Source of the DNA: Bispira polyomma | Taxonomy: Eukaryota | Assembly (NCBI GenBank): GCA_965649765.1 | Contig: OZ287759.1 | Coordinates: 5,766,001-5,830,000 of the forward strand | Direction of reading: 5' to 3' | Length of the DNA: 64,000 nucleotides | Part shown: positions 23,225 to 64,000 of the stretch, one piece after another | Layout of the letters: each line of letters starts with the position of its first letter | Position numbering within the stretch: position 1 is the first letter of the stretch | Translations under genes and position numbers: made by a program | The notes under the pieces: generated by a model | Database searches by the model: none | Seen by the model: the letters and a program-made list of their open reading frames with translations, nothing else | What the model was told of the DNA's origin: nothing

Positions 23225-23834
23225 AGTCTAAAAGGTTGCAAAATGTTTCAAAAAAAGTATGTTATATTATTAATGTCACTATCTTAATAACACAACCTTT
23301 GTTAAATTGTCTGTATGATTTTAAGGTTGTAGGGCACGTGACTACCACTTTCTGATAGGGAAAAAAAAACTTCAGATTTTCACGTTTAACGGGATTTGTT
23401 ATAAAGGCTATCGTAATGTGTAACACTTCACTGCTTATTTTATGAACAATGATTTAAGTGTGCAATTCTTTAAAAAAAAATCTTAAAACTTTTCAAAAAC
23501 AGCATGGTATCACATGTTCACTTTACCGAAATTGATCTGCTGTGCTTGACCTAATCAGACATACATTTCAACTGTCATCGGGTTTATGACCAGTCAATGC
23601 TCAGACAGAATTGTATCAACAACAAAACATTACTACCAAAAATGTAGCAAATTAATGCAGAAAGATAAATAAGCATTACATCTAATTACTTTTCATTTCT
23701 TTTGCAAATTTGCTGGCGGTACTGTTGTCTTCTTATTCCATAACAGAAAGAAATAACTAAGTGTGAACACTGTGTGGCAAAAATGAAGTAAGTCTGCAAA
23801 TTTTCTATTGTGAATTGATAGGATAAAATATGCC

Positions 23835-24082
23835 ATGGCTTTCAAAGAATTTATTAATAACACAACATTTTGCGGAATCAAAGGTACTACAGTGCCGCCA
23901 CAAAATTCCAATGCATTTTTGAGATGCTTTGCTTGGTGTTGATGTGTGGATTATATATTCTCATCATGACATCTTCTTTGTGCAGTTGTTATTCAAGTTA
24001 CAACAGCATCACCTTTATAACAACAGAATACAAGGTGTATCATCAGTTTTATGTCTGTATCTGCTTACACCTAAAAAATTAA
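23835..24082 (+). pseudogene. Decayed DEG/ENaC N-terminal fragment (unit 1)
   Basis: MAFKEFINNTTFCGIKGT, a frameshift, then AATKFQCIFEMLCLVLMCGLYILIMTSSLCS…SITFITTEYKVYHQF. Aligns to residues 1-~72 of the 447-aa ORF and ends at a (TA)n tract. Confidence 0.8.
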
Positions 24083-24084
24083 AA

Positions 24085-24089
<5 letters not shown>

Positions 24090-24135
<46 letters not shown>

Positions 24136-24150
24136 CAAATATATATATCT
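24090..24150. repeat. (TA)n microsatellite (also ~37417 and ~50744)
   Basis: Direct read; 2 bp shorter in unit 3. Confidence 0.95.
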
Positions 24151-26383
24151 AGATGTCACAGTACTTCAGTATGGCCCTATCTAGATAGCCCAACCAAACT
24201 AACACAAATACGATACTTTGACCTATCTTATATTAATTCATATAATGATATATTTAAGACAAAACCAAACCTTTCTAAGACACTAGGAAGATGTGGGTTC
24301 CAGTGTAATACGATTTCAATCTTTTATTAACCTCCCTGAGGCTTTGGGTAGTATTTGCCATAAATAGACAACCATTTTAAGTGATGTATTAACTTCACTA
24401 AACAGTCACATTTGGACAATGGGGCAATGCAATCAAATTGCCAGTGCAAAAACTGTACCTTAGGGGATAAGTAAAAATAAATCTGTAACCTATGATGAGA
24501 CTATCTAAGAAAAGGGTTGAAAAATATTCAAAGTCAGACGTGTATCTAAGGTTAATTTGCGTGACCAATACAAGACGTTTTACAAGACACTCTTGCTTTT
24601 AATTATCAATTATATTATTACCTTTTTCTACAGCCCTGCAATTATGAGGTTAAAATATAATATGCGAAAGCCTTATTCCTGAGTTTAAAGTATCATTAAA
24701 TCATGATAAATACATTCAGGCTGTGCAGAGGTATAAAATACCATGGAAAAATATATTGCATCCAGTGATTAAATGATGCACTTAGGATTTGTATTAGTCA
24801 ACAACTCTGATACTAAGTTGAATGTTTAATGAGAAATTTGTGTAAATTTGGTGTGGATTTTAATACTGTTCCCTGTCTATTTTCAAGTGCATATTGTTAT
24901 GTAAGAAACCATATTCTTAACCAATTCTGTATGTCACTTTATGGTTCTGTATTATGAGATCTAATATCCCATTTTGTACATAAAATTTACACTAAATGGA
25001 GAATTGCTATACAGAAAATATGTAAGTTATCTTACCATACTAAATGTACTATGGGAATACTATAACTGGAGCTATCTGTAGATTTTTCATATCTTACCAA
25101 ATAAATTTGTATTGTCCAAATCTGTATTGTCCAAAATATGGTCATACTTGTAAAAATTTCAGAACGTCTATACTCTGATTTGACTTAAGGTCACAATATA
25201 TTGATCCAGTGGCATCTTTTATGTCTGATTATCATTTTAACAAGGGTATGTACCAAAACTATGGTGTAGGACCATCTCAGTCAGAAAATGAGCACCATAG
25301 AGGATGAAATATTAATAGTGGGTGAATAAATGCTTCAATACTAATAATAAAAGTTATCGCAAAAACACCCACATGGGAGAGATGTTATGGTCGTGGTTAG
25401 GCTCATTTTGATATGCTTCTCACATCAATTTGTGACCTTATATTCACTAGTAGGCAAAGGCATGTTCACATTTTACCCAAAGATGTTATCCCATCAATGA
25501 TCCCAACAGCATTAATCGGGGACGGGCCAGGGACTTTACAATCACTAGAACAACTCCCCAAATGTGAGTCTAACCATTGACCTTCTGATTATTATAATAA
25601 TAAAGTAATTGAATTAAAGCACTTTAATTTGTGACTTATTGGATTCAGTTAAACAAAGTAACTGTTTTGATATTGTCTAACGATGATCACATACCTTTGT
25701 TTTCAAGTAAGATAATACAGGATATTAGTACTGCTGTACTGATTTCTAATTCAAAGTTACAAGTCATACATACCATTTTATTGAACTACCTCTAAAATGG
25801 ACAATTTCAAAGCTTCGTGAGAACAATATTAGGGCCATATTATAATTTTAACTTGATCATGTGTTATTACCAATACACATTTACTGTGATGTCTACTGAG
25901 ATATTGCATAAGTTATCGGCATCGACCATGCAAAATTATAAGACAAATTTTACTTGCAAAATACTAAAACTATAATATTCATGCATTCTGTTTTCTAGTG
26001 AAACAGAATATTGTATGAGTAAATAATGAACACACAAAACATACCATTTACCCATTAGTTAATATCCGGTTTATGTATTGACAGACATTAGTAGAATAAA
26101 CATTCCAATGGAAAGCTTCTGTTTGATGTTAGCAGATATTTTCCCATAAATACGCCTGTAATGGTAGAATATAAACCCATACAGAAGGAAAACACACTGA
26201 AAAACAATGCATATATTCTAGGATATTGTATTTGGAGAGATCTATTATGTGTGAATTTATCATATGATTTCAATATAGGATTAAGTCAGATGAATACAAC
26301 TCAAGAAATTTAAAATAAAATGGATTTTGATATCTATGCTGACACTAAAATAAAAAACCAGTAATATTAACAAAACAAAAATC

Positions 26384-27727
26384 ATGTCTTGCAAGGATTT
26401 TATTAACCATACTACATTACATGGAATCAGAAATACAGCAGAAGCCACAAAACCATGCAGAGTTATTTGGGTTGTATGCATGCTGTTCTTGTTTGGACTG
26501 TATCTTAGCATCACTATCACGTCTATCCAGTCATACTTAAAGTATGAAAGTGTGACCAGTATATCCACCACTTACAAGGCATACCAGGAATTTCCAGGCG
26601 TCACAATTTGCAATGTTAATACGTTTCAAAAATCAGTAACAAGGAGTAAATATCCATCAGTTTGGGAATATTATGAAAAAGTTATGATGGGATCTCAAGG
26701 AACAGATTACAAGCTTCCTGATTTACTGCACAACATCACTTTTCTAGAGTATTACCAAAATGCTGCACAGACAGTTAAAGATGTATTTGTTAATTGTCTC
26801 AATAAACAGGCTTCCTTCAATTGTACACCATTCATTGATTCTCATTTTACCAATTATGGAATGTGTTATACATTTCACTCAAATACTTATGTCAAAGGCA
26901 ATGGTGCCATTAAGATATATAATTATGGTTTATCCAATTCTATTGCATTTGTACTCAATGCAGATCAAGAGCAATACTTTATTCCAAGAACCGATGCAGT
27001 GGGTTTCTTTGTATCAATCCACGATTCCTTTTACTACTCACAGATGGAAACTGATCTCATTCTGGCTTCTGTAGGTAAAGAAACCCACATTTCTCTCAAA
27101 AAGAATGTGATGCATAGATTGCCCAGACCATACTCTTCATTGGATTGTGTTGATACAAGTATCAAGGAAAACCTGGATTATTGTCAAACAACCTGCCTTT
27201 GGAAATGTTCAGAAAGAAAGATTTACAGGGATAGCTGTAACTGTACAATTTTTGGTTCTGATACTAAGAAGTGCTCCCTGTATGACCTTTATGGTTGTGC
27301 ATTTTTTGCAATGACAGAAACAAAGAGAAATATAAGTGATGTGGAAAGTTGTGGTTGTATGCCCCATTGTGATGAAACTACCTATTCCACAAAGGTGACA
27401 TCTGCTGAATTTCCCAATACACCTACAATGGAATACACATCTGTTGTTGGCCAATGGCCAAACAGAAATGAAAGTTACATCAAAGAGAATTATGCTAAAG
27501 TTGTCATCTACTTTGATACATTAGAAGAAACTGCTTACTACCAAAGGAAAGTGATATCTGAAAATCAGCTAGTTGCCGAGTTTGGGGGCTTGCTTGGGTT
27601 ATTTCTTGGTGCAAGTGTTGTGACACTTTTGGAATTAATAGAATTTGGACTTTTATCCTGTCTGACATCTGCAAAAGCAAAAGTGTGTAAGAGACAGGTG
27701 AAGGATGGTGGGCAGAAAACATATTGA
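26384..27727 (+). CDS. DEG/ENaC (amiloride-sensitive channel family) subunit, single-exon ORF, 447 aa, copy 1
   Basis: Pre-TM1 TTLHG gating motif, TM1 (RVIWVVCMLFLFGLYL), FPGVTICNVN, YGMCYTF, Cys-rich thumb (CQTTC…CNC…CGCMPHC), and TM2 with GAS filter (AEFGGLLGLFLGASVVTLLE). A at -3 of ATG; AATAAA at 27931. Confidence 0.95.
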   Translation: MSCKDFINHTTLHGIRNTAEATKPCRVIWVVCMLFLFGLYLSITITSIQSYLKYESVTSISTTYKAYQEFPGVTICNVNTFQKSVTRSKYPSVWEYYEKVMMGSQGTDYKLPDLLHNITFLEYYQNAAQTVKDVFVNCLNKQASFNCTPFIDSHFTNYGMCYTFHSNTYVKGNGAIKIYNYGLSNSIAFVLNADQEQYFIPRTDAVGFFVSIHDSFYYSQMETDLILASVGKETHISLKKNVMHRLPRPYSSLDCVDTSIKENLDYCQTTCLWKCSERKIYRDSCNCTIFGSDTKKCSLYDLYGCAFFAMTETKRNISDVESCGCMPHCDETTYSTKVTSAEFPNTPTMEYTSVVGQWPNRNESYIKENYAKVVIYFDTLEETAYYQRKVISENQLVAEFGGLLGLFLGASVVTLLELIEFGLLSCLTSAKAKVCKRQVKDGGQKTY

Positions 27728-28344
27728 TCACTTGTGAAAATTGTTTATACTTATAGATTGCACTAGTGATTCTGCATAAAATACTTCTGATTGATTAATC
27801 GAATAGTAAATGCTTGTGTGCACTTGTTTGAAATATTAATTGATGTTGTTTTAGATAGTTTTGTTTACAAACATTAAATTAATGTTTGTAGTATTTTAAA
27901 AAACACTGGTAAAGGCTATATTACATAAAAAATAAAAGGAATTTTGGAATAGTCAATTTTATAAATGGTTAAAATTTTACCTTTAAATTGACAGGATTTA
28001 TTTTTGATAATTTTTTTAGATGTATCTACATACTTGGAATATATCCTTGATATCTTCCTGATTAGTTTTAGTGTTGAGAGTCTTGATGGCAAATTTAAAA
28101 CACCAGTGTTTGTTTGCATCAGTGTGCGTTTCCCACAATTTCTTTAAAACTCAAAATTCTTAAAATCTACTGCAAATATACCTTTAATTATCTGTAGCTC
28201 TTAAGTACAACGGTAGGCCATTTACTTTAAAGCATGTAAAAATCATATAAAGGTCACCTTAACAAAATTACTAATGCTTGAATTTTTCCTATTTTTCCTG
28301 TACAAACTACTCTTTCTTTGAGAATAGTTTTTCTTCAAAAGTAG

Positions 28345-28520
28345 TGTTCTAGATAATTTGTTAATGTTAACGTGGATTATATACTCTAATCATGGTCATT
28401 TATGTGCAGTCTCTTTTTCGAGTATGTCAGCATCACTTTTATAACAACAATAAAATGTGTATCATTAGTTTATATATCAATGTTCACATTTTCACTATCT
28501 TCTATCTCATACCCTTAAAT
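28345..28520 (+). pseudogene. Highly decayed DEG/ENaC TM1-region relic (also ~41672-41847 and ~54989-55164)
   Basis: gtggattatatactctaatcatg…cagcatcacttttataacaacaataaaatgtgtatcattagttt matches gtggattatatattctcatcatg…cagcatcacctttataacaacagaatacaaggtgtatcatcagttt at ~23946-24050. Confidence 0.65.
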
Positions 28521-28983
28521 CTACAACATCTACACAAATGACCAACCAAGAAGTGAAGGTACCAGTCGTTTCATCTATGCAACCTTTGCATAACTGCCCA
28601 AGACAGTGACTTTTGTGTTGTTGAAGAAAGACTTTCAAATGCTTTCAACAAACCTTTATCTGGTATTCATAGCACTAAAACTTTTTCCGAAACAGAGATA
28701 CTTGACTATGACCACTTATCAAAACCGCTAAAGAATCTTGAGCCAGCAACTAGGGAATAGGACCAAGTGACAGAGGACCACCATCTGAAGTGTTTACCTG
28801 AACTACTAGGCACTAGCATATTATAGCCCGCTCTGGATTATGTAATCACCAGTGGTTCTCCAGCAGGGGTCTCACTCCGTGGGTTGCTTCTGGGTGTGTG
28901 CTGGTGACCTTGCATAATGTCTAACATGGACAGTAGGCCAGAGGCATTTAGGCCACCAAAGTTGGTCTGTAAAACGTTCAGTT

Positions 28984-29310
28984 AGCCTATGCTTCCTTTC
29001 GGCAAATTACGACATCGGCCGATCCGATCCAACATTGGGCAATGTTTTGCTTTGGATTTTGGTGGGACAAAAACACAGTAATCACAATAAAATAAGCTTT
29101 CTCGTGCCATTTTTAAAGTCAAAATCTGACGAATATTGAGTATATATAGGATGAAAACTATATCTATATCTTTGAGAATAGTGTATTTGTCCAGTTTTGA
29201 TTTAAAATCAGACAGTCCTCCTGATTTTTCCCTCCCTGACAGATAAAATATGTTGGCCAAACAGACGTCGGCTGATCTGATGCAAATCTGCTGAAAGGAA
29301 GCACTTGGTT
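28984..29310. mobile_element. MITE-like element with terminal inverted repeats (also ~42311-42637 and ~55628-55954)
   Basis: Left end agcctatgcttcctttcggcaaatt is an inverted repeat of right end aaatctgctgaaaggaagcacttggtt. Confidence 0.6.
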
Positions 29311-29734
29311 GTATTATGTAATGACGAAAAAAATCGGCTGAGAAAACCATGCTGAAAGGAAGTGTAGACTTGTGGTGGTGGTGACCAAACTGGCTGTATA
29401 ATCAATGGCTGTAGCAGCATGTGAGTTGTGGTCTGTGTTTGATACTGGCTACCTGTTATCTGTGTTTTCATAACATATCTACATAACTACAATATACATA
29501 ACTAAGTATATTAAATACATTTACTCAACTTTTACATAACTACAATATACAGCTAGTTACAGAACCACTAAATCGAATCATTATAGTAGTAACAAGTACC
29601 ATTAAACTGTAACACAAATAATAATAAAAATTCATAGAAAAGAGGTCACAGTGAATATAACAGTTAATACAAAAGCATAAAACAAAATCTTTAATGAAAT
29701 ATTCCAAAATCCTAATTTTTTACCATAATTCATG

Positions 29735-31145
29735 AGCAGGTGCAAGACAAATATGTAACAAGTGGATTGACAAATAAAAAAGGCGAACACAGTATCATTT
29801 ATATTGACTTTTTTACAGCCTATATTTAACATGCAAAACTTTTGCAGAATATTACTATTTTCTTGCTTTTTACCAATGTTTTTGTGTATTTATTGGTAAA
29901 TATATTGCCTGATAGAACCTATAACAACTGTGTGTGAGTTCAGTTTTGGGTTCTTACGAACAAACTTATCTACTAGACAGCTAACAAAAGTTTCTATTTA
30001 CCCAACACTTTCCCAACTAAGGTTTAACTCTTTCGACGGGCCGCTATGGCCTAGTGGTTAGCAAGCATTGCGCTTCACAATCACTGGTCTCTCACCTCTG
30101 GGCGGCGTGAGTTCGAATCCCGTCGATGCCTATGTGGGAAAGGTGGTAGTTCCTTACTGTGGGCCGCTGGTTTCAGTGCAGAACCTTGACTGACTGTATG
30201 CAGTGTTTCCTCCAGCGTTTCCAAATACCCGTCCCAATATAACCTACTAAAAGGTACTAGAGTGGACGTTAAATATCCAAATTCAAAAAAAATTCAAAAA
30301 CCTTATCTCGGAGACCAATTATCCAGGGGCCTGTACATCCAAGCACTTAAGCACTTAAGCCAGCGAACACACTAAGTCTTGTTTAAGCCTTAGTTGGGTA
30401 AGTGTTGGGTAAATAGGAACCTTCGTTAATTGTCAGTTACTTTTGTTCGTAAAACCCCTAAAATTGAACCACAACTTGAACCCTGTGTTTGGGTATCAGT
30501 TAGGCAACATATTCACCAATATTTCAATGAAAACAATAGTGAAAACTTCTAAAAGCAAAAAAATGGTAATTATGCATTGTATTTTAGCTTTTATATTTAA
30601 AAATAGCCTGTAAAAATCAATATAAATATTGTTGGTTCGCCACCTTATTTGCCAATGCACTCGTACATATTTGTCATGATATCTGTCCTAAGATTTGTTG
30701 GGAGATGTGGATGTTTATGTATAGTTTAAAGTTCTAGATACATGATACACATAACTTAGTGTTATCCTAGATGGATCAATTACTCTGTGCACGACATATA
30801 AAAGCTTAATGTTTGTTAAATTGACCATAATTTCTACATTTATATTCTAACCACATCATATGGTGTCATAGAACCATACTGGTTAGACCTTTGTTTGGTT
30901 AGGTTTCAGTTAGTTCACCTTTAACAAAGGTCTAACTAATGTGGTTGTATGGCATCATTTGATGTGGTTATAATATAAATGTAGAAAATATGCCGCTTTT
31001 ATTAATCCATCTAGTGCAACAATAAGTTAAGTGTATCATATATATAGAATTTTTAAATATACGTAAAACACAATGTACTCATGAACATCTCCCAACAAAT
31101 CCTATGGCATATACGCCGACATATATGTACGAGTGCATTGGCCAT
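29735..31145. repeat. Two overlapping long imperfect palindromes (also ~43062-44472 and ~56379-57789)
   Basis: First arm pair ~29735-30028 / ~30383-30688; second arm pair ~30651-30895 / ~30923-31143. Confidence 0.85.
30038..30300 (+). mobile_element. Full-length tRNA-derived SINE (unit 1)
   Basis: A box tggcctagtgg, B box gttcgaatccc, A-rich tail. Same family as 10465. Confidence 0.92.
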
Positions 31146-31564
31146 ATAAACACGTGAACCAGTGTTAGTTTTATGGATTTTCATCAAGATGTTGCATCTT
31201 AGATTACGCGACAGAGAAAATCCAATCGTGAGGACAGCACTTTCTACCATCTCTTTATATCATTTTTAATTCATTTTTCGTACTTAATATTGTTTGGTAC
31301 TAAGTGTGTGTAGAGATTTTACCGTTACTGCTCCCCTGGGAAAACTTATATGCCTAGGCTCCTGAAATTTACAGGAAATGTTATTTATTACAAAAGCTTG
31401 CCTGGGAGTAATTTTGGCCTTATTTTGACAAACAAGATTGCCACCACTGGCGTTTCTTTGAAACTAATCAGGCTCTTAACTGTGTCTGTTTCTTAGCTGT
31501 AGAAGGTTGAATCTCTTTACGGATGATATGTTTAACGGATATATATGTCCTTTATAAACATGCA

Positions 31565-31950
31565 TACATTTGACCTTGAATCTCCTCATTCAAGGTCATC
31601 CATGTGCATCCAAGTGACCGATTTTGGCCATACTTTCCCTGGTGCCTATACCTCGCTTAATATTGGTCCTACAGATTTGTGATCTTAAAGAAACCTATAC
31701 AAAATCATGGGCTGGGAATCTTTTCATGTAGTCGGATTTGACCTTGGGCAACTCGTTCAAGGTCAAATACGAATGGCCAAACTTAAAAATGCCTATATCT
31801 CGCTTAAAATTGTCCTACAGGTGTGGGTTCTCTAACCAACCTATAGGAAATCATAATCAGGGAATTTTTTGATGTGGTCCAATTTGACCTGGCCTCTCGA
31901 TCAAGGTCAAACAGGGATGGCCAAACTTAAAAGTGCCTATATCTTACTTA
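31565..31950. repeat. ~146-168-bp tandem repeat (about 2.5 units) with tttgacctt…aaggtcaaa hairpins (also in units 2 and 3)
   Basis: Units begin at ~31568, ~31736 and ~31882. They resemble core repeats of non-autonomous Helitron-like elements (inference). Confidence 0.7.
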
Positions 31951-32179
31951 TCCACTCTAGTACCTGTTTAGGTTATATTGGGACGGGTAGTTGGAAACGC
32001 TGGAGGAAACACTGCATACAGTTGATCAAGGTTCTACACTGAAACCAGCAGCCCACAGTAAGGAACTACCACCTTTCCCACATGGGCATTGACGGGAGTT
32101 GAACTCACGCCGCCCAGAGGTGAGAGACCAGTGATTGTGAAGCGCAATGCTTGCTAACCACTAGGCCACAGTGGTCCCC
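31951..32179 (-). mobile_element. SINE in reverse orientation, tail missing (unit 1)
   Basis: Reverse complement of the family consensus. Confidence 0.92.
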
Positions 32180-32829
32180 GACGAGTATGTGAGCACATTG
32201 CCTTTGATCTAAGTTTAACGTTCTATAGTAGTGCCTTCTCCCATAACATTTTGGAAGCTCGGCAGTCATTGAAATTATGCTTTTTATAACCTTTCAGGCT
32301 ATTTGCTGCTCAAAACAGTTTCCTGGAAAAGGCATACCTATGCTCAGACAAACGAGAGTTAATGTTCTGTGCAAATATATTGACATCTGATGCATAAATA
32401 TACAGGGATAGATAGAGACAAAAAAAAGGTAACGCCTGGATTAACTTTGGTTTACTAAATTTTATTTCTTTGCAATTAGGCCTGGAACATAGAGGTGGGT
32501 ACTCTGTATTGAAGCTTGTGATGCACATGCGTTAGGTTTTTACACACATCACTATCTCTTGTTTGCAAACAGAAACCTGAAGAATTAAGTTTAGCTATAA
32601 TAGGATAGTAAACATTTAATTTCCAAGTAAATATGTATTTAAACTTGTGTTAATAATTTCACTCAACAAAATGGAAATCATCACCCAAGAAATGCATTTA
32701 AGCTAATATGAGATGGGAGATAGTGACAATGTGAACACTGTTATTGGTCTTTGAACTGTGACAAAGAGCCAACTGTGAACACACAAGTTTGCCTAGTGGC
32801 TGGGATGACCACTGTAAACTTACAAAGAT

Positions 32830-32915
32830 TCTTGCCTTTGCTGGGATTAGAACCGGGGCTCTTTGGATCTTAAGATTAGTAGTCCAGTACACTAATATTT
32901 GAGCTAAAGTGGAAA
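32830..32915 (-). mobile_element. Degenerate tRNA-like head of an older SINE (also in units 2 and 3)
   Basis: Minus strand reads ttagctcaaat… (A-box-like) and ggttctaatccc (B-box-like). Confidence 0.45.
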
Positions 32916-33684
32916 ACCTAGAAGCTTGAGTGTTTATGTGTAAATATACACGGATATTACACCACTTGAAATGGCGGTACTCTGTCACTGAGTACTATCT
33001 CCAGTGGCAGATTAATAAAATCCCGACGACATAGTTAAATGATCATCCTCAAGCACACCTCCGTGCCCATATAGTGGCTGCCCATGATGAAGCGTATTTG
33101 AAATGACCCTGTGTTGTATAAGTGCACAATAACAAATGTCCTATTTCATTTCAAAAGCAAATTCCAGTGAACCTTTCCAAAACATTTTGCCAAATTAATT
33201 TCCACTCTTACAGTAGGGGCATTTTATTGGGACGTCCTCAGGTTTTCGGGAAAAAGAATTGCTGTTGTTTGTTTGTGGCCGATTCTGTTTTTAGTACTCT
33301 TATAAAGCACTCCGGTTTCCCAAGCAGAATGCACATATGTCACATGATAAAGTGAAAAGACAGTTTGTGGATAAAAAAATACAATTTGAGAAAGAACAAT
33401 GTAAAACATATATACAATTACATCTTGATCACGTAATCAATTTTAAGAATACATGTTTAATGATACATTTAATTAGTACCAAAGTATTCAATAATAACAT
33501 ATAACTCATTACCTGTAAATTTATTATTTGTATCTCTTAATAGGATACAGTCACTCAAGATCACCATAATTTATCAAATGATTTTCACTGTACAAGTTAC
33601 ATATTTTTTGATTAACTAATTGACAGAGGAAGTTGTAACTAACATTGTATCTATTAATTTGAGATGGAAACTATGAGACTGGCT

Positions 33685-34480
33685 GATACAAATATTCAAC
33701 TACTTGCAGACTGTCTGTCCGCTGTCCAGGCGTGGATGAACTACTCCAAATTAAAACCTAACCCTGACAAAACGGAATTCATCCTCATAGGAAACAAGAA
33801 AAACAGTGAACTCCTAACATCTTTGTTTCCCATCTCCCAGCTGGGAAAAGACATACTACCTTCCAAAAAAAATTTATCTGTGGCTAATGCCCTTGTGAGC
33901 AGCCGCCTCGACTACTGCAACTCTCTTCTGCACGGAGCAAAAAAGTCACACATTAAAGCTCCAGTCTTTTCCAAACTACCTATGCAGGGTTATTTTTCGT
34001 CTGTTTTGTCGCAAAGATGTCACTCCTTACCTCAAAAAAAATTCCACTGGCTACCTATTTCATTCTCGTACTCATTCTCGTTCAAGATTCATGTTACCAC
34101 TTTTAAGGCTGTAGTCACTCGACAGCCCCCTACCTTGCTTCCTTTTTCTCCATCAGTAACCGTAAGAGAGACAACAGACTCTCTGTCTCCTTGGTCAGAC
34201 CCATCAGAAAGGTGGGATCCAGAGCATTCTCCACTACAGCTCCATTGTTATGGAACAGTCTCCCAGTTGACCTCAGATTAGTTGACATACTTATTGGTTT
34301 TAGGAAAAAGCTTAAAATCTATATTTTTTAACCTTGCCTACCCACCTTAACTTTCCTCATACACGTTCCCACTTCCTTCCTTACGACTTTGCCCTGTCCA
34401 TGGACTTAATCATTCTGCTGTTGCGCTTTAGAATATGCCTAACATCAATAAAGCACGTCAAAAATTAATCATAATAATAA
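33685..34480 (+). mobile_element. Internally deleted 3' fragment of an L2/CR1-group LINE (unit 1)
   Basis: WMNYSKLKPNPDKTEFILIG, ALVSSRLDYCNSLL and HWLP motifs. The 3' UTR matches the LINE end at ~2415-2460. Confidence 0.88.
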
Positions 34481-34644
34481 TTACATTATTAACGCAGACA
34501 TAAAAAGTTGTGTGCAGCATTCTTTATATTTACATTAGTATCACAGGAACAATACAAAGATGGTGGGCACTTGTTTTAGTTTTCATAAATATATTATTGA
34601 ATTTTAAGCCATCTATAGCCTGTAATTTTGTATAGTGTAATAAC

Positions 34645-37409: not shown

Positions 37410-37411
37410 AA

Positions 37412-37462
<51 letters not shown>

Positions 37463-50736: not shown

Positions 50737-50738
50737 AA

Positions 50739-50787
<49 letters not shown>

Positions 50788-53027: not shown

Positions 53028-54371
53028 ATGTCTTGCAAGGATTTTATTAACCATACTACATTACATGGAATCAGAAATACAGCAGAAGCCACAAAACCAT
53101 GCAGAGTTATTTGGGTTGTATGCATGCTGTTCTTGTTTGGACTGTATCTTAGCATCACTATCACGTCTATCCAGTCATACTTAAAGTATGAAAGTGTGAC
53201 CAGTATATCCACCACTTACAAGGCATACCAGGAATTTCCAGGCGTCACAATTTGCAATGTTAATACGTTTCAAAAATCAGTAACAAGGAGTAAATATCCA
53301 TCAGTTTGGGAATATTATGAAAAAGTTATGATGGGATCTCAAGGAACAGATTACAAGCTTCCTGATTTACTGCACAACATCACTTTTCTAGAGTATTACC
53401 AAAATGCTGCACAGACAGTTAAAGATGTATTTGTTAATTGTCTCAATAAACAGGCTTCCTTCAATTGTACACCATTCATTGATTCTCATTTTACCAATTA
53501 TGGAATGTGTTATACATTTCACTCAAATACTTATGTCAAAGGCAATGGTGCCATTAAGATATATAATTATGGTTTATCCAATTCTATTGCATTTGTACTC
53601 AATGCAGATCAAGAGCAATACTTTATTCCAAGAACCGATGCAGTGGGTTTCTTTGTATCAATCCACGATTCCTTTTACTACTCACAGATGGAAACTGATC
53701 TCATTCTGGCTTCTGTAGGTAAAGAAACCCACATTTCTCTCAAAAAGAATGTGATGCATAGATTGCCCAGACCATACTCTTCATTGGATTGTGTTGATAC
53801 AAGTATCAAGGAAAACCTGGATTATTGTCAAACAACCTGCCTTTGGAAATGTTCAGAAAGAAAGATTTACAGGGATAGCTGTAACTGTACAATTTTTGGT
53901 TCTGATACTAAGAAGTGCTCCCTGTATGACCTTTATGGTTGTGCATTTTTTGCAATGACAGAAACAAAGAGAAATATAAGTGATGTGGAAAGTTGTGGTT
54001 GTATGCCCCATTGTGATGAAACTACCTATTCCACAAAGGTGACATCTGCTGAATTTCCCAATACACCTACAATGGAATACACATCTGTTGTTGGCCAATG
54101 GCCAAACAGAAATGAAAGTTACATCAAAGAGAATTATGCTAAAGTTGTCATCTACTTTGATACATTAGAAGAAACTGCTTACTACCAAAGGAAAGTGATA
54201 TCTGAAAATCAGCTAGTTGCCGAGTTTGGGGGCTTGCTTGGGTTATTTCTTGGTGCAAGTGTTGTGACACTTTTGGAATTAATAGAATTTGGACTTTTAT
54301 CCTGTCTGACATCTGCAAAAGCAAAAGTGTGTAAGAGACAGGTGAAGGATGGTGGGCAGAAAACATATTGA
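53028..54371 (+). CDS. DEG/ENaC subunit, copy 3 (identical protein)
   Basis: Identical translation to copy 1. Confidence 0.95.
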   Translation: MSCKDFINHTTLHGIRNTAEATKPCRVIWVVCMLFLFGLYLSITITSIQSYLKYESVTSISTTYKAYQEFPGVTICNVNTFQKSVTRSKYPSVWEYYEKVMMGSQGTDYKLPDLLHNITFLEYYQNAAQTVKDVFVNCLNKQASFNCTPFIDSHFTNYGMCYTFHSNTYVKGNGAIKIYNYGLSNSIAFVLNADQEQYFIPRTDAVGFFVSIHDSFYYSQMETDLILASVGKETHISLKKNVMHRLPRPYSSLDCVDTSIKENLDYCQTTCLWKCSERKIYRDSCNCTIFGSDTKKCSLYDLYGCAFFAMTETKRNISDVESCGCMPHCDETTYSTKVTSAEFPNTPTMEYTSVVGQWPNRNESYIKENYAKVVIYFDTLEETAYYQRKVISENQLVAEFGGLLGLFLGASVVTLLELIEFGLLSCLTSAKAKVCKRQVKDGGQKTY

Positions 54372-56681
54372 TCACTTGTGAAAATTGTTTATACTTATAG
54401 ATTGCACTAGTGATTCTGCATAAAATACTTCTGATTGATTAATCGAATAGTAAATGCTTGTGTGCACTTGTTTGAAATATTAATTGATGTTGTTTTAGAT
54501 AGTTTTGTTTACAAACATTAAATTAATGTTTGTAGTATTTTAAAAAACACTGGTAAAGGCTATATTACATAAAAAATAAAAGGAATTTTGGAATAGTCAA
54601 TTTTATAAATGGTTAAAATTTTACCTTTAAATTGACAGGATTTATTTTTGATAATTTTTTTAGATGTATCTACATACTTGGAATATATCCTTGATATCTT
54701 CCTGATTAGTTTTAGTGTTGAGAGTCTTGATGGCAAATTTAAAACACCAGTGTTTGTTTGCATCAGTGTGCGTTTCCCACAATTTCTTTAAAACTCAAAA
54801 TTCTTAAAATCTACTGCAAATATACCTTTAATTATCTGTAGCTCTTAAGTACAACGGTAGGCCATTTACTTTAAAGCATGTAAAAATCATATAAAGGTCA
54901 CCTTAACAAAATTACTAATGCTTGAATTTTTCCTATTTTTCCTGTACAAACTACTCTTTCTTTAAGAATAGTTTTTCTTCAAAAGTAGTGTTCTAGATAA
55001 TTTGTTAATGTTAACGTGGATTATATACTCTAATCATGGTCATTTATGTGCAGTCTCTTTTTCGAGTATGTCAGCATCACTTTTATAACAACAATAAAAT
55101 GTGTATCATTAGTTTATATATCAATGTTCACATTTTCACTATCTTCTATCTCATACCCTTAAATCTACAACATCTACACAAATGACCAACCAAGAAGTGA
55201 AGGTACCAGTCGTTTCATCTATGCAACCTTTGCATAACTGCCCAAGACAGTGACTTTTGTGTTGTTGAAGAAAGACTTTCAAATGCTTTCAACAAACCTT
55301 TATCTGGTATTCATAGCACTAAAACTTTTTCCGAAACAGAGATACTTGACTATGACCACTTATCAAAACCGCTAAAGAATCTTGAGCCAGCAACTAGGGA
55401 ATAGGACCAAGTGACAGAGGACCACCATCTGAAGTGTTTACCTGAACTACTAGGCACTAGCATATTATAGCCCGCTCTGGATTATGTAATCACCAGTGGT
55501 TCTCCAGCAGGGGTCTCACTCCGTGGGTTGCTTCTGGGTGTGTGCTGGTGACCTTGCATAATGTCTAACATGGACAGTAGGCCAGAGGCATTTAGGCCAC
55601 CAAAGTTGGTCTGTAAAACGTTCAGTTAGCCTATGCTTCCTTTCGGCAAATTACGACATCGGCCGATCCGATCCAACATTGGGCAATGTTTTGCTTTGGA
55701 TTTTGGTGGGACAAAAACACAGTAATCACAATAAAATAAGCTTTCTCGTGCCATTTTTAAAGTCAAAATCTGACGAATATTGAGTATATATAGGATGAAA
55801 ACTATATCTATATCTTTGAGAATAGTGTATTTGTCCAGTTTTGATTTAAAATCAGACAGTCCTCCTGATTTTTCCCTCCCTGACAGATAAAATATGTTGG
55901 CCAAACAGACGTCGGCTGATCTGATGCAAATCTGCTGAAAGGAAGCACTTGGTTGTATTATGTAATGACGAAAAAAATCGGCTGAGAAAACCATGCTGAA
56001 AGGAAGTGTAGACTTGTGGTGGTGGTGACCAGACTGGCTGTATAATCAATGGCTGTAGCAGCATGTGAGTTGTGGTCTGTGTTTGATACTGGCTACCTGT
56101 TATCTGTGTTTTCATAACATATCTACATAACTACAATATACATAACTAAGTATATTAAATACATTTACTCAACTTTTACATAACTACAATATACAGCTAG
56201 TTACAGAACCACTAAATCGAATCATTATAGTAGTAACAAGTACCATTAAACTGTAACACAAATAATAATAAAAATTCATAGAAAAGAGGTCACAGTGAAT
56301 ATAACAGTTAATACAAAAGCATAAAACAAAATCTTTAATGAAATATTCCAAAATCCTAATTTTTTACCATAATTCATGAGCAGGTGCAAGACAAATATGT
56401 AACAAGTGGATTGACAAATAAAAAAGGCGAACACAGTATCATTTATATTGACTTTTTTACAGCCTATATTTAACATGCAAAACTTTTGCAGAATATTACT
56501 ATTTTCTTGCTTTTTACCAATGTTTTTGTGTATTTATTGGTAAATATATTGCCTGATAGAACCTATAACAACTGTGTGTGAGTTCAGTTTTGGGTTCTTA
56601 CGAACAAACTTATCTACTAGACAGCTAACAAAAGTTTCTATTTACCCAACACTTTCCCAACTAAGGTTTAACTCTTTCGAC

Positions 56682-56944
56682 GGGCCGCTATGGCCTAGTG
56701 GTTAGCAAGCATTGCGCTTCACAATCACTGGTCTCTCACCTCTGGGCGGCGTGAGTTCGAATCCCGTCGATGCCTATGTGGGAAAGGTGGTAGTTCCTTA
56801 CTGTGGGCCGCTGGTTTCAGTGCAGAACCTTGACTGACTGTATGCAGTGTTTCCTCCAGCGTTTCCAAATACCCGTCCCAATATAACCTACTAAAAGGTA
56901 CTAGAGTGGACGTTAAATATCCAAATTCAAAAAAAATTCAAAAA
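56682..56944 (+). mobile_element. SINE (unit 3)
   Basis: Copy of 30038-30300. Confidence 0.92.
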
Positions 56945-58594
56945 CCTTATCTCGGAGACCAATTATCCAGGGGCCTGTACATCCAAGCACTTAAGCACTT
57001 AAGCCAGCGAACACACTAAGTCTTGTTTAAGCCTTAGTTGGGTAAGTGTTGGGTAAATAGGAACCTTCGTTAATTGTCAGTTACTTTTGTTCGTAAAACC
57101 CCTAAAATTGAACCACAACTTGAACCCTGTGTTTGGGTATCAGTTAGGCAACATATTCACCAATATTTCAATGAAAACAATAGTGAAAACTTCTAAAAGC
57201 AAAAAAATGGTAATTATGCATTGTATTTTAGCTTTTATATTTAAAAATAGCCTGTAAAAATCAATATAAATATTGTTGGTTCGCCACCTTATTTGCCAAT
57301 GCACTCGTACATATTTGTCATGATATCTGTCCTAAGATTTGTTGGGAGATGTGGATGTTTATGTATAGTTTAAAGTTCTAGATACATGATACACATAACT
57401 TAGTGTTATCCTAGATGGATCAATTACTCTGTGCACGACATATAAAAGCTTAATGTTTGTTAAATTGACCATAATTTCTACATTTATATTCTAACCACAT
57501 CATATGGTGTCATAGAACCATACTGGTTAGACCTTTGTTTGGTTAGGTTTCAGTTAGTTCACCTTTAACAAAGGTCTAACTAATGTGGTTGTATGGCATC
57601 ATTTGATGTGGTTATAATATAAATGTAGAAAATATGCCGCTTTTATTAATCCATCTAGTGCAACAATAAGTTAAGTGTATCATATATATAGAATTTTTAA
57701 ATATACGTAAAACACAATGTACTCATGAACATCTCCCAACAAATCCTATGGCATATACGCCGACATATATGTACGAGTGCATTGGCCATATAAACACGTG
57801 AACCAGTGTTAGTTTTATGGATTTTCATCAAGATGTTGCATCTTAGATTACGCGACAGAGAAAATCCAATCGTGAGGACAGCACTTTCTACCATCTCTTT
57901 ATATCATTTTTAATTCATTTTTCGTACTTAATATTGTTTGGTACTAAGTGTGTGTAGAGATTTTACCGTTACTGCTCCCCTGGGAAAACTTATATGCCTA
58001 GGCTCCTGAAATTTACAGGAAATGTTATTTATTACAAAAGCTTGCCTGGGAGTAATTTTGGCCTTATTTTGACAAACAAGATTGCCACCACTGGCGTTTC
58101 TTTGAAACTAATCAGGCTCTTAACTGTGTCTGTTTCTTAGCTGTAGAAGGTTGAATCTCTTTACGGATGATATGTTTAACGGATATATATGTCCTTTATA
58201 AACATGCATACATTTGACCTTGAATCTCCTCATTCAAGGTCATCCATGTGCATCCAAGTGACCGATTTTGGCCATACTTTCCCTGGTGCCTATACCTCGC
58301 TTAATATTGGTCCTACAGATTTGTGATCTTAAAGAAACCTATACAAAATCATGGGCTGGGAATCTTTTCATGTAGTCGGATTTGACCTTGGGCAACTCGT
58401 TCAAGGTCAAATACGAATGGCCAAACTTAAAAATGCCTATATCTCGCTTAAAATTGTCCTACAGGTGTGGGTTCTCTAACCAACCTATAGGAAATCATAA
58501 TCAGGGAATTTTTTGATGTGGTCCAATTTGACCTGGCCTCTCGATCAAGGTCAAACAGGGATGGCCAAACTTAAAAGTGCCTATATCTTACTTA

Positions 58595-58823
58595 TCCACT
58601 CTAGTACCTGTTTAGGTTATATTGGGACGGGTAGTTGGAAACGCTGGAGGAAACACTGCATACAGTTGATCAAGGTTCTACACTGAAACCAGCAGCCCAC
58701 AGTAAGGAACTACCACCTTTCCCACATGGGCATTGACGGGAGTTGAACTCACGCCGCCCAGAGGTGAGAGACCAGTGATTGTGAAGCGCAATGCTTGCTA
58801 ACCACTAGGCCACAGTGGCCCCC
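58595..58823 (-). mobile_element. SINE, reverse (unit 3)
   Basis: Copy of 31951-32179. Confidence 0.92.
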
Positions 58824-60328
58824 GACGAGTATGTGAGCACATTGCCTTTGATCTAAGTTTAACGTTCTATAGTAGTGCCTTCTCCCATAACATTTTGGAA
58901 GCTCGGCAGTCATTGAAATTATGCTTTTTATAACCTTTCAGGCTATTTGCTGCTCAAAACAGTTTCCTGGAAAAGGCATACCTATGCTCAGACAAACGAG
59001 AGTTAATGTTCTGTGCAAATATATTGACATCTGATGCATAAATATACAGGGATAGATAGAGACAAAAAAAAGGTAACGCCTGGATTAACTTTGGTTTACT
59101 AAATTTTATTTCTTTGCAATTAGGCCTGGAACATAGAGGTGGGTACTCTGTATTGAAGCTTGTGATGCACATGCGTTAGGTTTTTACACACATCACTATC
59201 TCTTGTTTGCAAACAGAAACCTGAAGAATTAAGTTTAGCTATAATAGGATAGTAAACATTTAATTTCCAAGTAAATATGTATTTAAACTTGTGTTAATAA
59301 TTTAACTCAACAAAATGGAAATCATCACCCAAGAAATGCATTTAAGCTAATATGAGATGGGAGATAGTGACAATGTGAACACTGTTATTGGTCTTTGAAC
59401 TGTGACAAAGAGCCAACTGTGAACACACAAGTTTGCCTAGTGGCTGGGATGACCACTGTAAACTTACAAAGATTCTTGCCTTTGCTGGGATTAGAACCGG
59501 GGCTCTTTGGATCTTAAGATTAGTAGTCCAGTACACTAATATTTGAGCTAAAGTGGAAAACCTAGAAGCTTGAGTGTTTATGTGTAAATATACACGGATA
59601 TTACACCACTTGAAATGGCGGTACTCTGTCACTGAGTACTATCTCCAGTGGCAGATTAATAAAATCCCGACGACATAGTTAAATGATCATCCTCAAGCAC
59701 ACCTCCGTGCCCATATAGTGGCTGCCCATGATGAAGCGTATTTGAAATGACCCTGTGTTGTATAAGTGCACAATAACAAATGTCCTATTTCATTTCAAAA
59801 GCAAATTCCAGTGAACCTTTCCAAAACATTTTGCCAAATTAATTTCCACTCTTACAGTAGGGGCATTTTATTGGGACGTCCTCAGGTTTTCGGGAAAAAG
59901 AATTGCTGTTGTTTGTTTGTGGCCGATTCTGTTTTTAGTACTCTTATAAAGCACTCCGGTTTCCCAAGCAGAATGCACATATGTCACATGATAAAGTGAA
60001 AAGACAGTTTGTGGATAAAAAAATACAATTTGAGAAAGAACAATGTAAAACATATATACAATTACATCTTGATCACGTAATCAATTTTAAGAATACATGT
60101 TTAATGATACATTTAATTAGTACCAAAGTATTCAATAATAACATATAACTCATTACCTGTAAATTTATTATTTGTATCTCTTAATAGGATACAGTCACTC
60201 AAGATCACCATAATTTATCAAATGATTTTCACTGTACAAGTTACATATTTTTTGATTAACTAATTGACAGAGGAAGTTGTAACTAACATTGTATCTATTA
60301 ATTTGAGATGGAAACTATGAGACTGGCT

Positions 60329-61124
60329 GATACAAATATTCAACTACTTGCAGACTGTCTGTCCGCTGTCCAGGCGTGGATGAACTACTCCAAATTAAAA
60401 CCTAACCCTGACAAAACGGAATTCATCCTCATAGGAAACAAGAAAAACAGTGAACTCCTAACATCTTTGTTTCCCATCTCCCAGCTGGGAAAAGACATAC
60501 TACCTTCCAAAAAAAATTTATCTGTGGCTAATGCCCTTGTGAGCAGCCGCCTCGACTACTGCAACTCTCTTCTGCACGGAGCAAAAAAGTCACACATTAA
60601 AGCTCCAGTCTTTTCCAAACTACCTATGCAGGGTTATTTTTCGTCTGTTTTGTCGCAAAGATGTCACTCCTTACCTCAAAAAAAATTCCACTGGCTACCC
60701 ATTTCATTCTCGTACTCATTCTCGTTCAAGATTCATGTTACCACTTTTAAGGCTGTAGTCACTCGACAGCCCCCTACCTTGCTTCCTTTTTCTCCATCAG
60801 TAACCGTAAGAGAGACAACAGACTCTCTGTCTCCTTGGTCAGACCCATCAGAAAGGTGGGATCCAGAGCATTCTCCACTACAGCTCCATTGTTATGGAAC
60901 AGTCTCCCAGTTGACCTCAGATTAGTTGACATACTTATTGGTTTTAGGAAAAAGCTTAAAATCTATATTTTTTAACCTTGCCTACCCACCTTAACTTTCC
61001 TCATACACGTTCCCACTTCCTTCCTTACGACTTTGCCCTGTCCATGGACTTAATCATTCTGCTGTTGCGCTTTAGAATATGCCTAACATCAATAAAGCAC
61101 GTCAAAAATTAATCATAATAATAA
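60329..61124 (+). mobile_element. LINE 3' fragment (unit 3)
   Basis: Copy of 33685-34480. Confidence 0.88.
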
Positions 61125-63363
61125 TTACATTATTAACGCAGACATAAAAAGTTGTGTGCAGCATTCTTTATATTTACATTAGTATCACAGGAACAATACA
61201 AAGATGGTGGGCACTTGTTTTAGTTTTCATAAATATATTATTGAATTTTAAGCCATCTATAGCCTGTAATTTTGTATAGTGTAATAACTGATATTCATCA
61301 GGATTAAATTATACATTGTAATCGGCACTAAATCTATCACATACGTTAAGCATCATATGTAATGAAGCTAATGTGGGGCTTAAAAGAATGATGTCACCAG
61401 CATAGCTAAAGCTGCCCATATATTTAATCCCAATATGACATCCACAACCAGAATCTCTCACCTGAATTAGTAATTACTGAATTAGCAATTGATCTATATA
61501 TATACAATGAAAAATAGTGAGGAGAGCACACCACCTTGATGTACACCATTACTTAATGTGCATGCGTTAGACAGACTATTACCCCATTTAACATAAAGGG
61601 GTCGGTGTGTGTACATATAAATAAATAAAGAAAGAAATAAAAAATCCACTGAACTAAGTTCAAAACAACCAAATACAATGACGTCGCAACAATAACGTTG
61701 TACAAACATTTGTATTTGCCTCCTTATTACCCAGAACAATACATACTAGCACATTATACAACAGGAAAGTGAACACCATATGATTTACTTACAGATAATG
61801 GATGTTATAACACTGGGAAGTAGGACACCAATAAATGTACCATGCTCTCTGTGCCTTAGAATTCATATATACATATATATATATATCACTTTAACAAACA
61901 TTTGATCAGGCTGATTTGGCAATCTATGGCCCAGCAATTACTGGTCTGTGTGTATTTCTACAGTCATTTGAACAACATAACTAATCACTTGACCTGTGAT
62001 ATTGTCGAATCATTTCAAATCCCATTGGATTCTGTTTGACTGGAACACATGTTTTGAACAATCTACAAACAGAGCTATTATATACATCCTATACAACAGA
62101 GAATAAAAAATATAAAATGATTAGGGGAGTATAAATATTATTCCAATGGCCAAAGAGTATCAAAAGCTTGTGGGCTGTCTCTAAATGTAACATGACATTC
62201 TCACATGAATTATTCTGTTAAGTGGTGGTGTGAAAAAAGAAAAAGAAATTATTGTTTTTCTCCTGTATTTCACATAAAACTAAATATGCCATATTTTCAT
62301 AAGCTCATATAGTTATTAGATATTACTAAAATTATATATATAAATGTGTTTCTATGTTTATATGTACAAAAATTTGAGTTTGCCTTTAACTTTTCTTTAC
62401 CTTTTAATAAGCCCTACATTTCTCACATTAGTCATAAAAGTTGCTTTAATGATATAGTAGTATTCAGCAAACCTTCAACATGTACTGAATATAATATCTA
62501 GGTATCATTCAGACGGATGGCCATCACAAACACACCCACAGACATCTTTTAAGCGATCAGTGACAGTAGGTTGCATCTTCGTTTGTTTACATAAGGAGCG
62601 CTTCGGAAGTTTTCGTTGATATTCATGTGCATTAGTCGGGCCATCACAAAAGTGATTTTAGTGGGGAAGGGTGTGGAGGGGTATACATCTTGATTTGTTT
62701 TGGATTGACTCTTGTCAGTACCAGGCTGTGTTGGCTTGATGTGGCTCGTTTGCATTAGTGTCAATTAGTAGCAGTTAGGGAACATTCGCTGATGTTAGTG
62801 ATGTATTAGTGGGTGCTTGTTATTATCGTTCATGTCTTCGTTTATTATTAGTGGCCGTCACAGTTTGCTTTCAAACTCGCCTCACGTTAGTGATATACGT
62901 GGTGTAAAAACAGTCCGTTCATGGTGTAAGCTCCCGCAACGAAGGGTCACAGATGCACATCTAAATGAGACCAGGCCTTAATGCATACAACCAAAAAATG
63001 AAAATCAAATGAAAAATAAAGTTAAAACATATTAAATCCTCAAAAATGCGCCCTTAGTAAATACTGTGTTTTCAAGTGATATTTTACCTGAGAAAAAAAT
63101 AACAAAAAAAATCCATTAAAATAGGCTCATTATTCTAGTTTAAAAATATGAATACAAATTTTCACTGGAAATGAATTAATTTTCACTCTATATTCAAGCT
63201 AGTTTTTAACCTTTTTTTTGTCCATCTATGCCCTTTGCCCATTTATAGAATTGTATTGTTTTTCTACAATTGTTCGTCCAATTGCTAATGAAATATGTTT
63301 AAATAAAAAAGCAAACTCAAATAAATTCCCAGTGAAAATTTCCAATACATACTCTATTTCTAA

Positions 63364-64000
63364 GATTTGTTATAAAGGCTATCGTAATGTGTAACACTTC
63401 ACTGCTTATTTTATGAACAATGATTTAAGTGTGCAATTCTTTAAAAAAAAATCTTAAAACTTTTCAAAAACAGCATGGTATCACATGTTCACTTTACCGA
63501 AATTGATCTGCTGTGCTTGACCTAATCAGACATACATTTCAACTGTCATCGGGTTTATGACCAGTCAATGCTCAGACAGAATTGTATCAACAACAAAACA
63601 TTACTACCAAAAATGTAGCAAATTAATGCAGAAAGATAAATAAGCATTACATCTAATTACTTTTCATTTCTTTTGCAAATTTGCTGGCGGTACTGTTGTC
63701 TTCTTATTCCATAACAGAAAGAAATAACTAAGTGTGAACACTGTGTGGCAAAAATGAAGTAAGTCTGCAAATTTTCTATTGTGAATTGATAGGATAAAAT
63801 ATGCCATGGCTTTCAAAGAATTTATTAATAACACAACATTTTGCGGAATCAAAGGTACTACAGTGCCGCCACAAAATTCCAATGCATTTTTGAGATGCTT
63901 TGCTTGGTGTTGATGTGTGGATTATATATTCTCATCATGACATCTTCTTTGTGCAGTTGTTATTCAAGTTACAACAGCATCACCTTTATAACAACAGAAT
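63364..64000 (+). repeat. Start of tandem unit 4, running off the window
   Basis: Same junction (tatttctaa|gatttgttat) and matching following sequence. Confidence 0.95.
63806..64000 (+). pseudogene. Decayed DEG/ENaC N-terminal fragment (unit 4, cut by window end)
   Basis: Copy of sequence from 23835 onward. Confidence 0.8.

What the first reader, a model, noticed from the sequence alone, without database searches (positions are those of the whole stretch)
23393..64000. Very recent head-to-tail amplification (3 full units plus the start of a 4th) of a 13.3-kb unit whose only intact gene is a DEG/ENaC channel
Seen: exact junctions at 36720, 50047 and 63364, and a single intact host ORF per unit with identical protein. 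Established: near-identical tandem gene arrays are typical of recent copy-number expansion, for example by unequal crossover or circular-DNA reintegration. Inference: this is a young, possibly polymorphic and dosage-selected expansion of an uncharacterised sensory or ion-transport channel.
Basis: partly seen in the sequence, partly recalled or inferred. Interest (0 to 1): 0.85.

Follow-up and report, generated by a model that had tools for sequence, protein, structure and literature searches.

The report
Seven-copy tandem sodium-channel gene array
A 13.3-kb stretch holding one intact ENaC/ASIC-type ion-channel gene is repeated head to tail seven times in this invertebrate chromosome, and the pattern of small differences shows that a four-copy array grew to seven through one very recent unequal crossover; this is a clean example of an ordinary process.

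Summary
The array has exactly seven units of 13,317-13,328 bp, 93.3 kb in all (window 23393 to 52,662 bases past the window's end, C12:5789393-5882662). Each unit carries an identical, intronless 447-aa DEG/ENaC gene, and nothing else recognisable.

Units 2 and 5 are identical, and so are units 3 and 6. Unit 4 matches unit 7 on its left and unit 1 on its right. That pattern is what one unequal crossover between the last and first unit of a four-unit array would leave. The two 39,971-bp blocks it produced differ at only three sites, all explained by the chimera, so the event is very recent.

The outer breakpoints lie in unique DNA and share only 2 bp, so the first duplication was not mediated by repeats.

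Read-derived contigs from two samples confirm both the unit-to-unit and the flank-to-unit junction. They cannot give a copy number, so over-traversal of an assembly loop (true array of four units) is not excluded.

No RNA data were available. Polymorphism and dosage selection remain untested.

This is a new member of a known kind (a young tandem gene amplification in an expanding channel family). The scan holds no earlier follow-up of this array.

The parts
23393..64000 (+). In-window part of the tandem array. The whole array is seven units and ends 52,662 bases beyond the window (C12:5789393-5882662).
23393..36719 (+). Unit 1 (13,327 bp). One private base at 29388 (unit position 5996).
36720..50046 (+). 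Unit 2 (13,327 bp), identical to unit 5.
50047..63363 (+). Unit 3 (13,317 bp), identical to unit 6. It lacks 2 bp in a TA run and 8 bp that lie 118-125 bp upstream of the start codon.
63364..64000 (+). Start of unit 4, the chimeric unit (unit-7-like up to unit position 7030, unit-1-like from 8517).
26384..27727 (+). Intronless 447-aa DEG/ENaC gene, copy 1. Full ASC domain, HG at residues 13-14, GAS at 409-411, 20 cysteines.
39711..41054 (+). Same gene, copy 2 (100% identical). Contigs of sample S1 also carry a synonymous T>C at 39872 that is in none of the assembled copies.
53028..54371 (+). Same gene, copy 3 (100% identical).
25743..26383 (+). About 640 bp upstream of the gene that is still alignable (70-81%) with the upstream DNA of the nearest paralogs at C12:11.33 Mb. 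Likely 5' regulatory region copied with the gene (inferred).
23861..24064 (+). Decayed N-terminal fragment of another DEG/ENaC gene (aa 9-76, 36%), carried in every unit.
19767..19910 (-). Inverted partner of that fragment in the left flank (aa 4-50, 40%). The arms 19274-19929 and 23825-24712 are 75-77% alike.
30038..32193 (.). Foldback-like dispersed repeat inside the unit. Inverted arms 30038-30266 and 31951-32178 are 93% alike; the inner part has many copies at 85-87%.
33658..34278 (+). 207-aa open frame, probably the tail of a retroelement reverse transcriptase. RVT_1 match is faint (E 0.1, below cut-off).
20647..22593 (.). Dispersed repeat in the left flank (many copies at 83-93%). The 800 bp between it and the array are unique.

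Best explanation
This is a real, young tandem segmental amplification of a 13.3-kb stretch that carries one functional-looking, intronless DEG/ENaC (ASIC/BASIC-like) channel gene with its upstream DNA. The proposed history has four steps. (1) A gene copy related to the cluster at C12:11.33 Mb came to lie at 5.79 Mb (dS about 0.25). (2) A non-homologous or microhomology-mediated event, with only 2 bp shared at the breakpoints and both breakpoints in unique DNA, made the first tandem copy. (3) Unequal exchanges built an array of four units (units 1, 2, 3, 7), which differ by 0.05-0.13%. (4) One unequal crossover paired unit 7 of one chromatid or homologue with unit 1 of the other. The exchange lay between unit positions 7030 and 8517 and gave the present order 1-2-3-(7/1 chimera)-2-3-7. 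The result is seven identical coding sequences, each with its own upstream region, so up to seven-fold gene dosage if all are transcribed. Shown here: the anatomy, the chimera, the junctions, the intact gene. Inferred: the order of events, the ages, the dosage effect.
For: Seven units with exact junctions and no partial unit. Units 2=5 and 3=6 are identical. At the 17 sites where units 1 and 7 differ, unit 4 follows unit 7 at the three leftmost and unit 1 at the other fourteen; the chance of that ordering is 0.003. The two 39,971-bp blocks differ at 3 sites, all explained by the chimera. The breakpoints share only 'GA', and both flanks next to the array are unique in the genome. The unit as a whole occurs nowhere else. 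A contig of run X3 (sample S2) bridges the unit-to-unit junction (36677-37296, no differences). In X1 and X2 (sample S1) a contig begins exactly at 36720, and the loose letters before it equal the last 30 letters of the left flank. Gene integrity: full ASC profile at E 3e-69; HG, GAS and post-TM1 motifs aligned to ASIC1; dN/dS 0.31 against the nearest paralog.
Against: Copy number rests on the assembly alone. The runs were available only as contigs, whose depth the tool says must not be read as copy number. The duplicated block (40 kb, identical) is longer than ordinary long reads, so an assembler could have gone round a loop once too often or too seldom. No RNA run was found, so transcription of any copy is unshown. 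The last 545 bp of unit 7 are about 1.3% diverged, which does not fit a uniformly young array.
Confidence: 0.7

Rival explanations
1. Assembly artefact. The true array has four units (or four per haplotype), and the assembler joined two haplotypes or traversed a graph loop twice. 'Unit 4' would then be the allelic form of unit 1.
For: Units 2=5 and 3=6 are identical, and the repeated block of 40 kb exceeds normal read length. The left 8.5 kb of unit 4 is identical to unit 7, so reads leaving unit 3 fit both. Contig data give no usable copy number.
Against: If unit 4 were only an allele of unit 1, it would be a coincidence that both sites where it departs from units 1-3 (1654, 7030) carry the unit-7 letter, and that all three of its differences from unit 1 are the leftmost of the 17 sites (P 0.003). 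Two haplotypes differing at 3 of 40,000 sites would be unusually alike for a genome whose contig graphs are so fragmented (mean contig 110-160 bp). Sample S1 also holds a variant (39872 T>C) absent from all seven copies, which points to a separate second haplotype. There is no N or gap in the array.
Confidence: 0.15
2. An older array kept uniform by concerted evolution (gene conversion and repeated unequal exchange), not a very recent amplification. Near-identity would then reflect homogenisation, not age.
For: The last 545 bp of unit 7 differ at 7 sites (about 1.3%). Old repeat copies elsewhere side with units 1-6 at two of these sites and with unit 7 at two others, so both lineages have changed. 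The outermost end of an array cannot be replaced by crossover.
Against: The left end of unit 1, which should be equally protected, shows no old divergence: there is no difference from unit 2 in the first 5,995 bp. An allelic crossover with an unduplicated haplotype near the right edge explains the patch equally well. The last step (4 to 7 units) is recent in either case.
Confidence: 0.1
3. The array arose from an extrachromosomal circle or rolling-circle copy that re-integrated, or the unit is itself a mobile element that captured the gene.
For: All unit-to-unit junctions are identical, as a circle's junction would be.
Against: Identical junctions follow equally from unequal exchange after one duplication. 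The array sits exactly between the two breakpoints of its own unit, with no second insertion site. The unit occurs nowhere else in 1.03 Gb. Its ends show no terminal repeats, target duplication or Helitron-type termini. The chimeric unit needs a crossover in any case.
Confidence: 0.04

Closest known systems
Young tandem gene amplifications made by unequal crossover (textbook cases from my own knowledge: human AMY1 arrays, amplified esterase genes of aphids and mosquitoes)
   Same: Head-to-tail units of about 10 kb or more, near-identical copies, one gene per unit, growth in multi-unit steps that leave a higher-order pattern and a chimeric unit.
   Different: No evidence here of copy-number variation between individuals or of a selective agent. 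The gene is an ion channel of unknown stimulus.
Lineage-specific expansions of DEG/ENaC channels (C. elegans degenerins, Drosophila pickpocket genes, sea-anemone NeNaCs; PMC9822975)
   Same: The genome holds at least 60 mostly single-exon DEG/ENaC matches, many in tandem clusters. The paper describes extensive lineage-specific diversification from two ancestral clades.
   Different: Those expansions are old and diverged. Here the copies are identical, so this catches an expansion step before any divergence.
ASIC / BASIC (ASIC5) channels, clade A of DEG/ENaC
   Same: Best solved-structure matches are ASIC1 and ASIC5 (E 2e-35 to 5e-35, aligned end to end), with conserved HG, post-TM1 and GAS motifs. 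The nearest feature-space clusters are arthropod pickpocket channels, also clade A.
   Different: Best named homolog is only 26% identical. The protein is 447 aa with very short termini. Proton gating or any other stimulus is untested.

Membership tests
DEG/ENaC channel subunit (Pfam PF00858, ASC) | Full-length ASC domain above the curated cut-off | tested here: met
   234.5 bits against a cut-off of 23.6, profile positions 1-455 of 455, residues 6-421
DEG/ENaC channel subunit (Pfam PF00858, ASC) | N-terminal HG motif, post-TM1 motif, and GAS selectivity-filter motif in TM2, with two hydrophobic segments flanking a cysteine-rich ectodomain | tested here: met
   HG at 13-14, FPGVT at 70, GAS at 409-411, 20 cysteines. 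All aligned to the same motifs of ASIC1.
DEG/ENaC channel subunit (Pfam PF00858, ASC) | Forms a trimeric, amiloride-sensitive cation channel | not testable with these tools
   Needs expression and electrophysiology.
ASIC (proton-gated) subfamily | Orthology to deuterostome ASICs and proton gating | not tested
   Only similarity is shown (E 2e-35 to ASIC1; best named hit 26%). No tree was built and no function is known.
Tandem amplification by unequal crossover | Identical head-to-tail junctions and a whole number of units between one pair of breakpoints | tested here: met
   Seven units, exact junctions, no partial unit.
Tandem amplification by unequal crossover | A recombinant unit whose two parts match two different parental units at a single switch point, followed by duplicated neighbours | tested here: met
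   Unit 4 follows unit 7 at 3 sites, then unit 1 at 14 sites. Units 5=2 and 6=3.
Tandem amplification by unequal crossover | Copy number confirmed by reads independent of the assembly | tested here: inconclusive
   Junctions are confirmed in contigs of two samples, but only contigs were available and their depth is not a copy number.
Mobile element or Helitron-type rolling-circle array | Unit present at other sites in the genome; defined termini or target-site duplication | tested here: not met
   Only repeat fragments and the gene's paralogs match elsewhere. The ends share 2 bp only.

The most novel reading that the evidence does not exclude
The seven-unit array is a still-segregating allele alongside the four-unit ancestor (and perhaps others), and copy number of this lineage-specific channel is under dosage selection. 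That would be an adaptive amplification of a sensory or ion-transport channel caught within a few thousand generations of its origin. The synonymous variant seen only in sample S1, and the different contig breaks inside the gene in sample S2, hint that individuals differ at this locus.
Probability: 0.12. Interest if true: 0.55.

Novelty: new member of a known kind. Interest (0 to 1): 0.3.

Why it matters
The array is a tidy natural record of how gene families grow. One can read off the first non-homologous duplication, the small array, and the single unequal crossover that nearly doubled it, before any copy has diverged. For the biology of the animal it marks one lineage-specific DEG/ENaC channel (no relative above 59% identity among 5.8 billion proteins) whose dosage may recently have risen up to seven-fold. 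That makes it a reasonable candidate for expression and copy-number surveys. It does not reveal a new mechanism.

Tried and rejected
(1) Copy number from reads. Reads were laid on the junction-plus-gene stretch, and all three runs were Logan contigs. Unit contigs have a word depth several times that of small side contigs, but the tool states that contig depth is not a copy number, and no flank baseline was obtained, so I do not use it.

(2) RNA evidence. No RNA run holds the stretch.

(3) Repeat-mediated origin. Rejected, because both breakpoints lie in unique DNA.

(4) Mobile element or Helitron. Rejected.

(5) Ectopic conversion as the source of the unit-7 end patch. Not supported, because the changes lie on both lineages.

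(6) Other genes in the unit. Ten further frames gave nothing above Pfam cut-offs, and there is no tRNA or Rfam hit.

(7) Taxon. COX1 on the mitochondrial contig has 9 in-frame TGA codons, so no stop-free piece of at least 90 aa in its frame was available to search by reference. I left the species unidentified.

(8) 'Identical protein means selection'. Rejected: P = 0.15 by chance alone.
Full report
THE OBSERVATION

Self-comparison of the window shows a direct repeat with period 13,327 or 13,317 bp from 23393 to the window's end. Identity is 99.89-100%, and the junctions at 36720, 50047 and 63364 are exact. The window is G000:C12:5766001-5830000, on a 49.3-Mb chromosome-scale contig of a 1.035-Gb assembly. 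The gene occurs seven times at this site.

I fetched 80 kb to the right. The array has exactly seven units, from window coordinate 23393 to 52,662 bases past the window's end (C12:5789393-5882662, 93,270 bp). There is no partial unit on either side and no N.

WHAT A UNIT CONTAINS

Each unit has one long open frame (window 26384-27727 in unit 1). It encodes 447 aa and is 100% identical in all seven copies.

- It matches Pfam PF00858 (amiloride-sensitive sodium channel) over the entire profile, at E 3e-69.
- Against solved structures it aligns end to end with ASIC1 and ASIC5 (E 2e-35 to 5e-35). The HG motif, the post-TM1 motif and the GAS selectivity filter are all conserved.
- By language-model features its nearest clusters are arthropod pickpocket channels.
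- By similarity to these members I place it provisionally in clade A of the family as drawn in PMC9822975; I built no tree.

The rest of the unit is repeat debris:

- a foldback-like dispersed repeat (30038-32193);
- a probable reverse-transcriptase tail (33658-34278, only a faint RVT_1 match);
- an old dispersed repeat near the unit's right end;
- a decayed N-terminal fragment of another DEG/ENaC gene (23861-24064), whose inverted partner lies in the left flank.

There is no tRNA, no Rfam family, and no other frame above a Pfam cut-off.

HISTORY READ FROM THE DIFFERENCES

A seven-way alignment has 29 variable columns, about 19 events.

- Units 2 and 5 are identical, and so are units 3 and 6.
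- Units 1 and 7 differ at 17 sites. Unit 4 carries the unit-7 letter at the three leftmost (unit positions 1654, 5996, 7030) and the unit-1 letter at all fourteen others (8517 onward).
- The chance that the three unit-7-like sites are the outermost three is 0.003.

This is what one unequal crossover predicts. Unit 7 of one copy of a four-unit array (1-2-3-7) pairs with unit 1 of another, and the exchange falls between positions 7030 and 8517. The product is 1-2-3-(7/1)-2-3-7.

The two resulting 39,971-bp blocks differ at three sites only, all accounted for by the chimera. No mutation has therefore accumulated since the event. Mutation rates for this species are unknown. If I assume 1e-9 to 1e-8 per site per generation, the 95% upper bound on its age is about 3,800-38,000 generations (inference).

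The four parental units differ by 0.05-0.13%.

THE FIRST DUPLICATION

The left flank, the unit start, the unit end and the right flank share only the dinucleotide GA at the breakpoints. The 800 bp left of the array and the 1.5 kb right of it are unique in the genome. The founding event was therefore non-homologous or microhomology-mediated, not recombination between repeats. The unit as a whole occurs nowhere else, which rules out a mobile element.

WHERE THE GENE CAME FROM

The genome has at least 60 mostly single-exon DEG/ENaC matches, many in tandem clusters. The nearest are two tandem paralogs at C12:11.33 Mb, 84-85% identical in protein. One has a frame break near residue 315, and the other has a stop at codon 438.

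Homology to them covers the ORF plus about 640 bp upstream and ends at the stop codon. Against the full-length paralog dS is 0.25 and dN/dS is 0.31, so the gene has evolved under constraint.

Outside this genome the best relatives are 55-59% identical. They are unnamed proteins, four of the five on one 3-Mb ENA contig. The best named hit is a starfish ASIC-like protein at 26%.

INDEPENDENT SUPPORT FROM READS

Three runs of one study and two samples hold the stretch, all as Logan contigs. I laid them on 35055-41054.

- Run X3 (sample S2) has a contig that bridges the unit-to-unit junction (36677-37296) without a difference.
- In X1 and X2 (sample S1) a contig begins exactly at 36720. The loose letters before that place equal the last 30 letters of the left flank.
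- Both kinds of junction therefore exist in reads.
- Contigs of all three runs break at about 36706. That is where unit 7's private base (unit position 13316) would make the graph branch (inference).
- S1 also carries a synonymous T>C at 39872 (codon 54) that is in none of the seven assembled copies. It probably comes from the other haplotype.

Contig depth is not a copy number, as the tool itself states, and I obtained no flank baseline.

UNEXPLAINED

Seven of unit 7's ten private differences lie in its last 545 bp, about 1.3%. Old repeat copies elsewhere agree with units 1-6 at two of these sites and with unit 7 at two others, so both lineages have changed. There are two possible readings. 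An allelic crossover may have brought in the end of an unduplicated, diverged haplotype. Alternatively the array is older than its interior suggests and is being homogenised.

VERDICT

The interpretation as a young amplification of the unequal-crossover type is supported by internal evidence. Polymorphism, dosage selection and expression are untested. Identity of the protein across copies is no sign of selection (P 0.15 by chance).

The main rival is an assembly loop error, which I put at about 15%. The phenomenon is well known, so this is a new, unusually legible instance in a lineage-specific channel gene.

Noticed in passing
window 19274-19929 (-) and 23825-24712 (+): Old inverted duplication (75-77%) that straddles the left edge of the array. 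Each arm holds a decayed N-terminal DEG/ENaC fragment (aa 4-50 at 19767-19910, aa 9-76 at 23861-24064). The site therefore held channel genes long before the present array.
   Followed up: partly
G000:C12:11322001-11342000 (L019, L020): The two nearest paralogs form an older tandem pair (86% alike over 2.1 kb, 8.8 kb apart). One has a frame break near residue 315, the other a stop at codon 438. Two further paralogs (47-49%) lie at C12:11.26-11.29 Mb.
   Followed up: partly
whole genome: At least 60 DEG/ENaC matches, most as single open frames of 430-540 aa, many in tandem clusters (C3:19.58 Mb x3, C10:23.97-24.05 Mb, C12:12.60-12.62 Mb x3, C4:35.38-35.40 Mb). This is a large, mostly intronless family.
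   Followed up: no
last unit, C12:5882118-5882662 (L014:2118-2662): A cluster of 7 private differences in the last 545 bp of unit 7 (about 1.3%), with changes on both lineages. Either an allelic crossover at the array's edge or a remnant of an older array.
   Followed up: partly
window 39872: Synonymous T>C (codon 54 TAT>TAC) in contigs of sample S1 only, absent from all seven assembled copies and from sample S2. It suggests further unit variants on the unassembled haplotype.
   Followed up: partly
window 23082-23224: Two copies of a 71-bp tandem repeat 170 bp left of the array boundary (88% match).
   Followed up: no
window 2521-5044 (-), 20799-22468 (-), 17092-17478 (+): Open frames of retroelement and transposase type in the left flank. 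2540-3028 and 20799-21287 share a C-terminal motif with the 33664-34281 frame inside the unit. None reaches a Pfam cut-off.
   Followed up: no
G000:C75:4864-6204 (L018): Mitochondrial COX1 with nine in-frame TGA codons, as expected for an animal mitochondrial code. No stop-free piece of 90 aa or more in its frame was available to search for the species.
   Followed up: no
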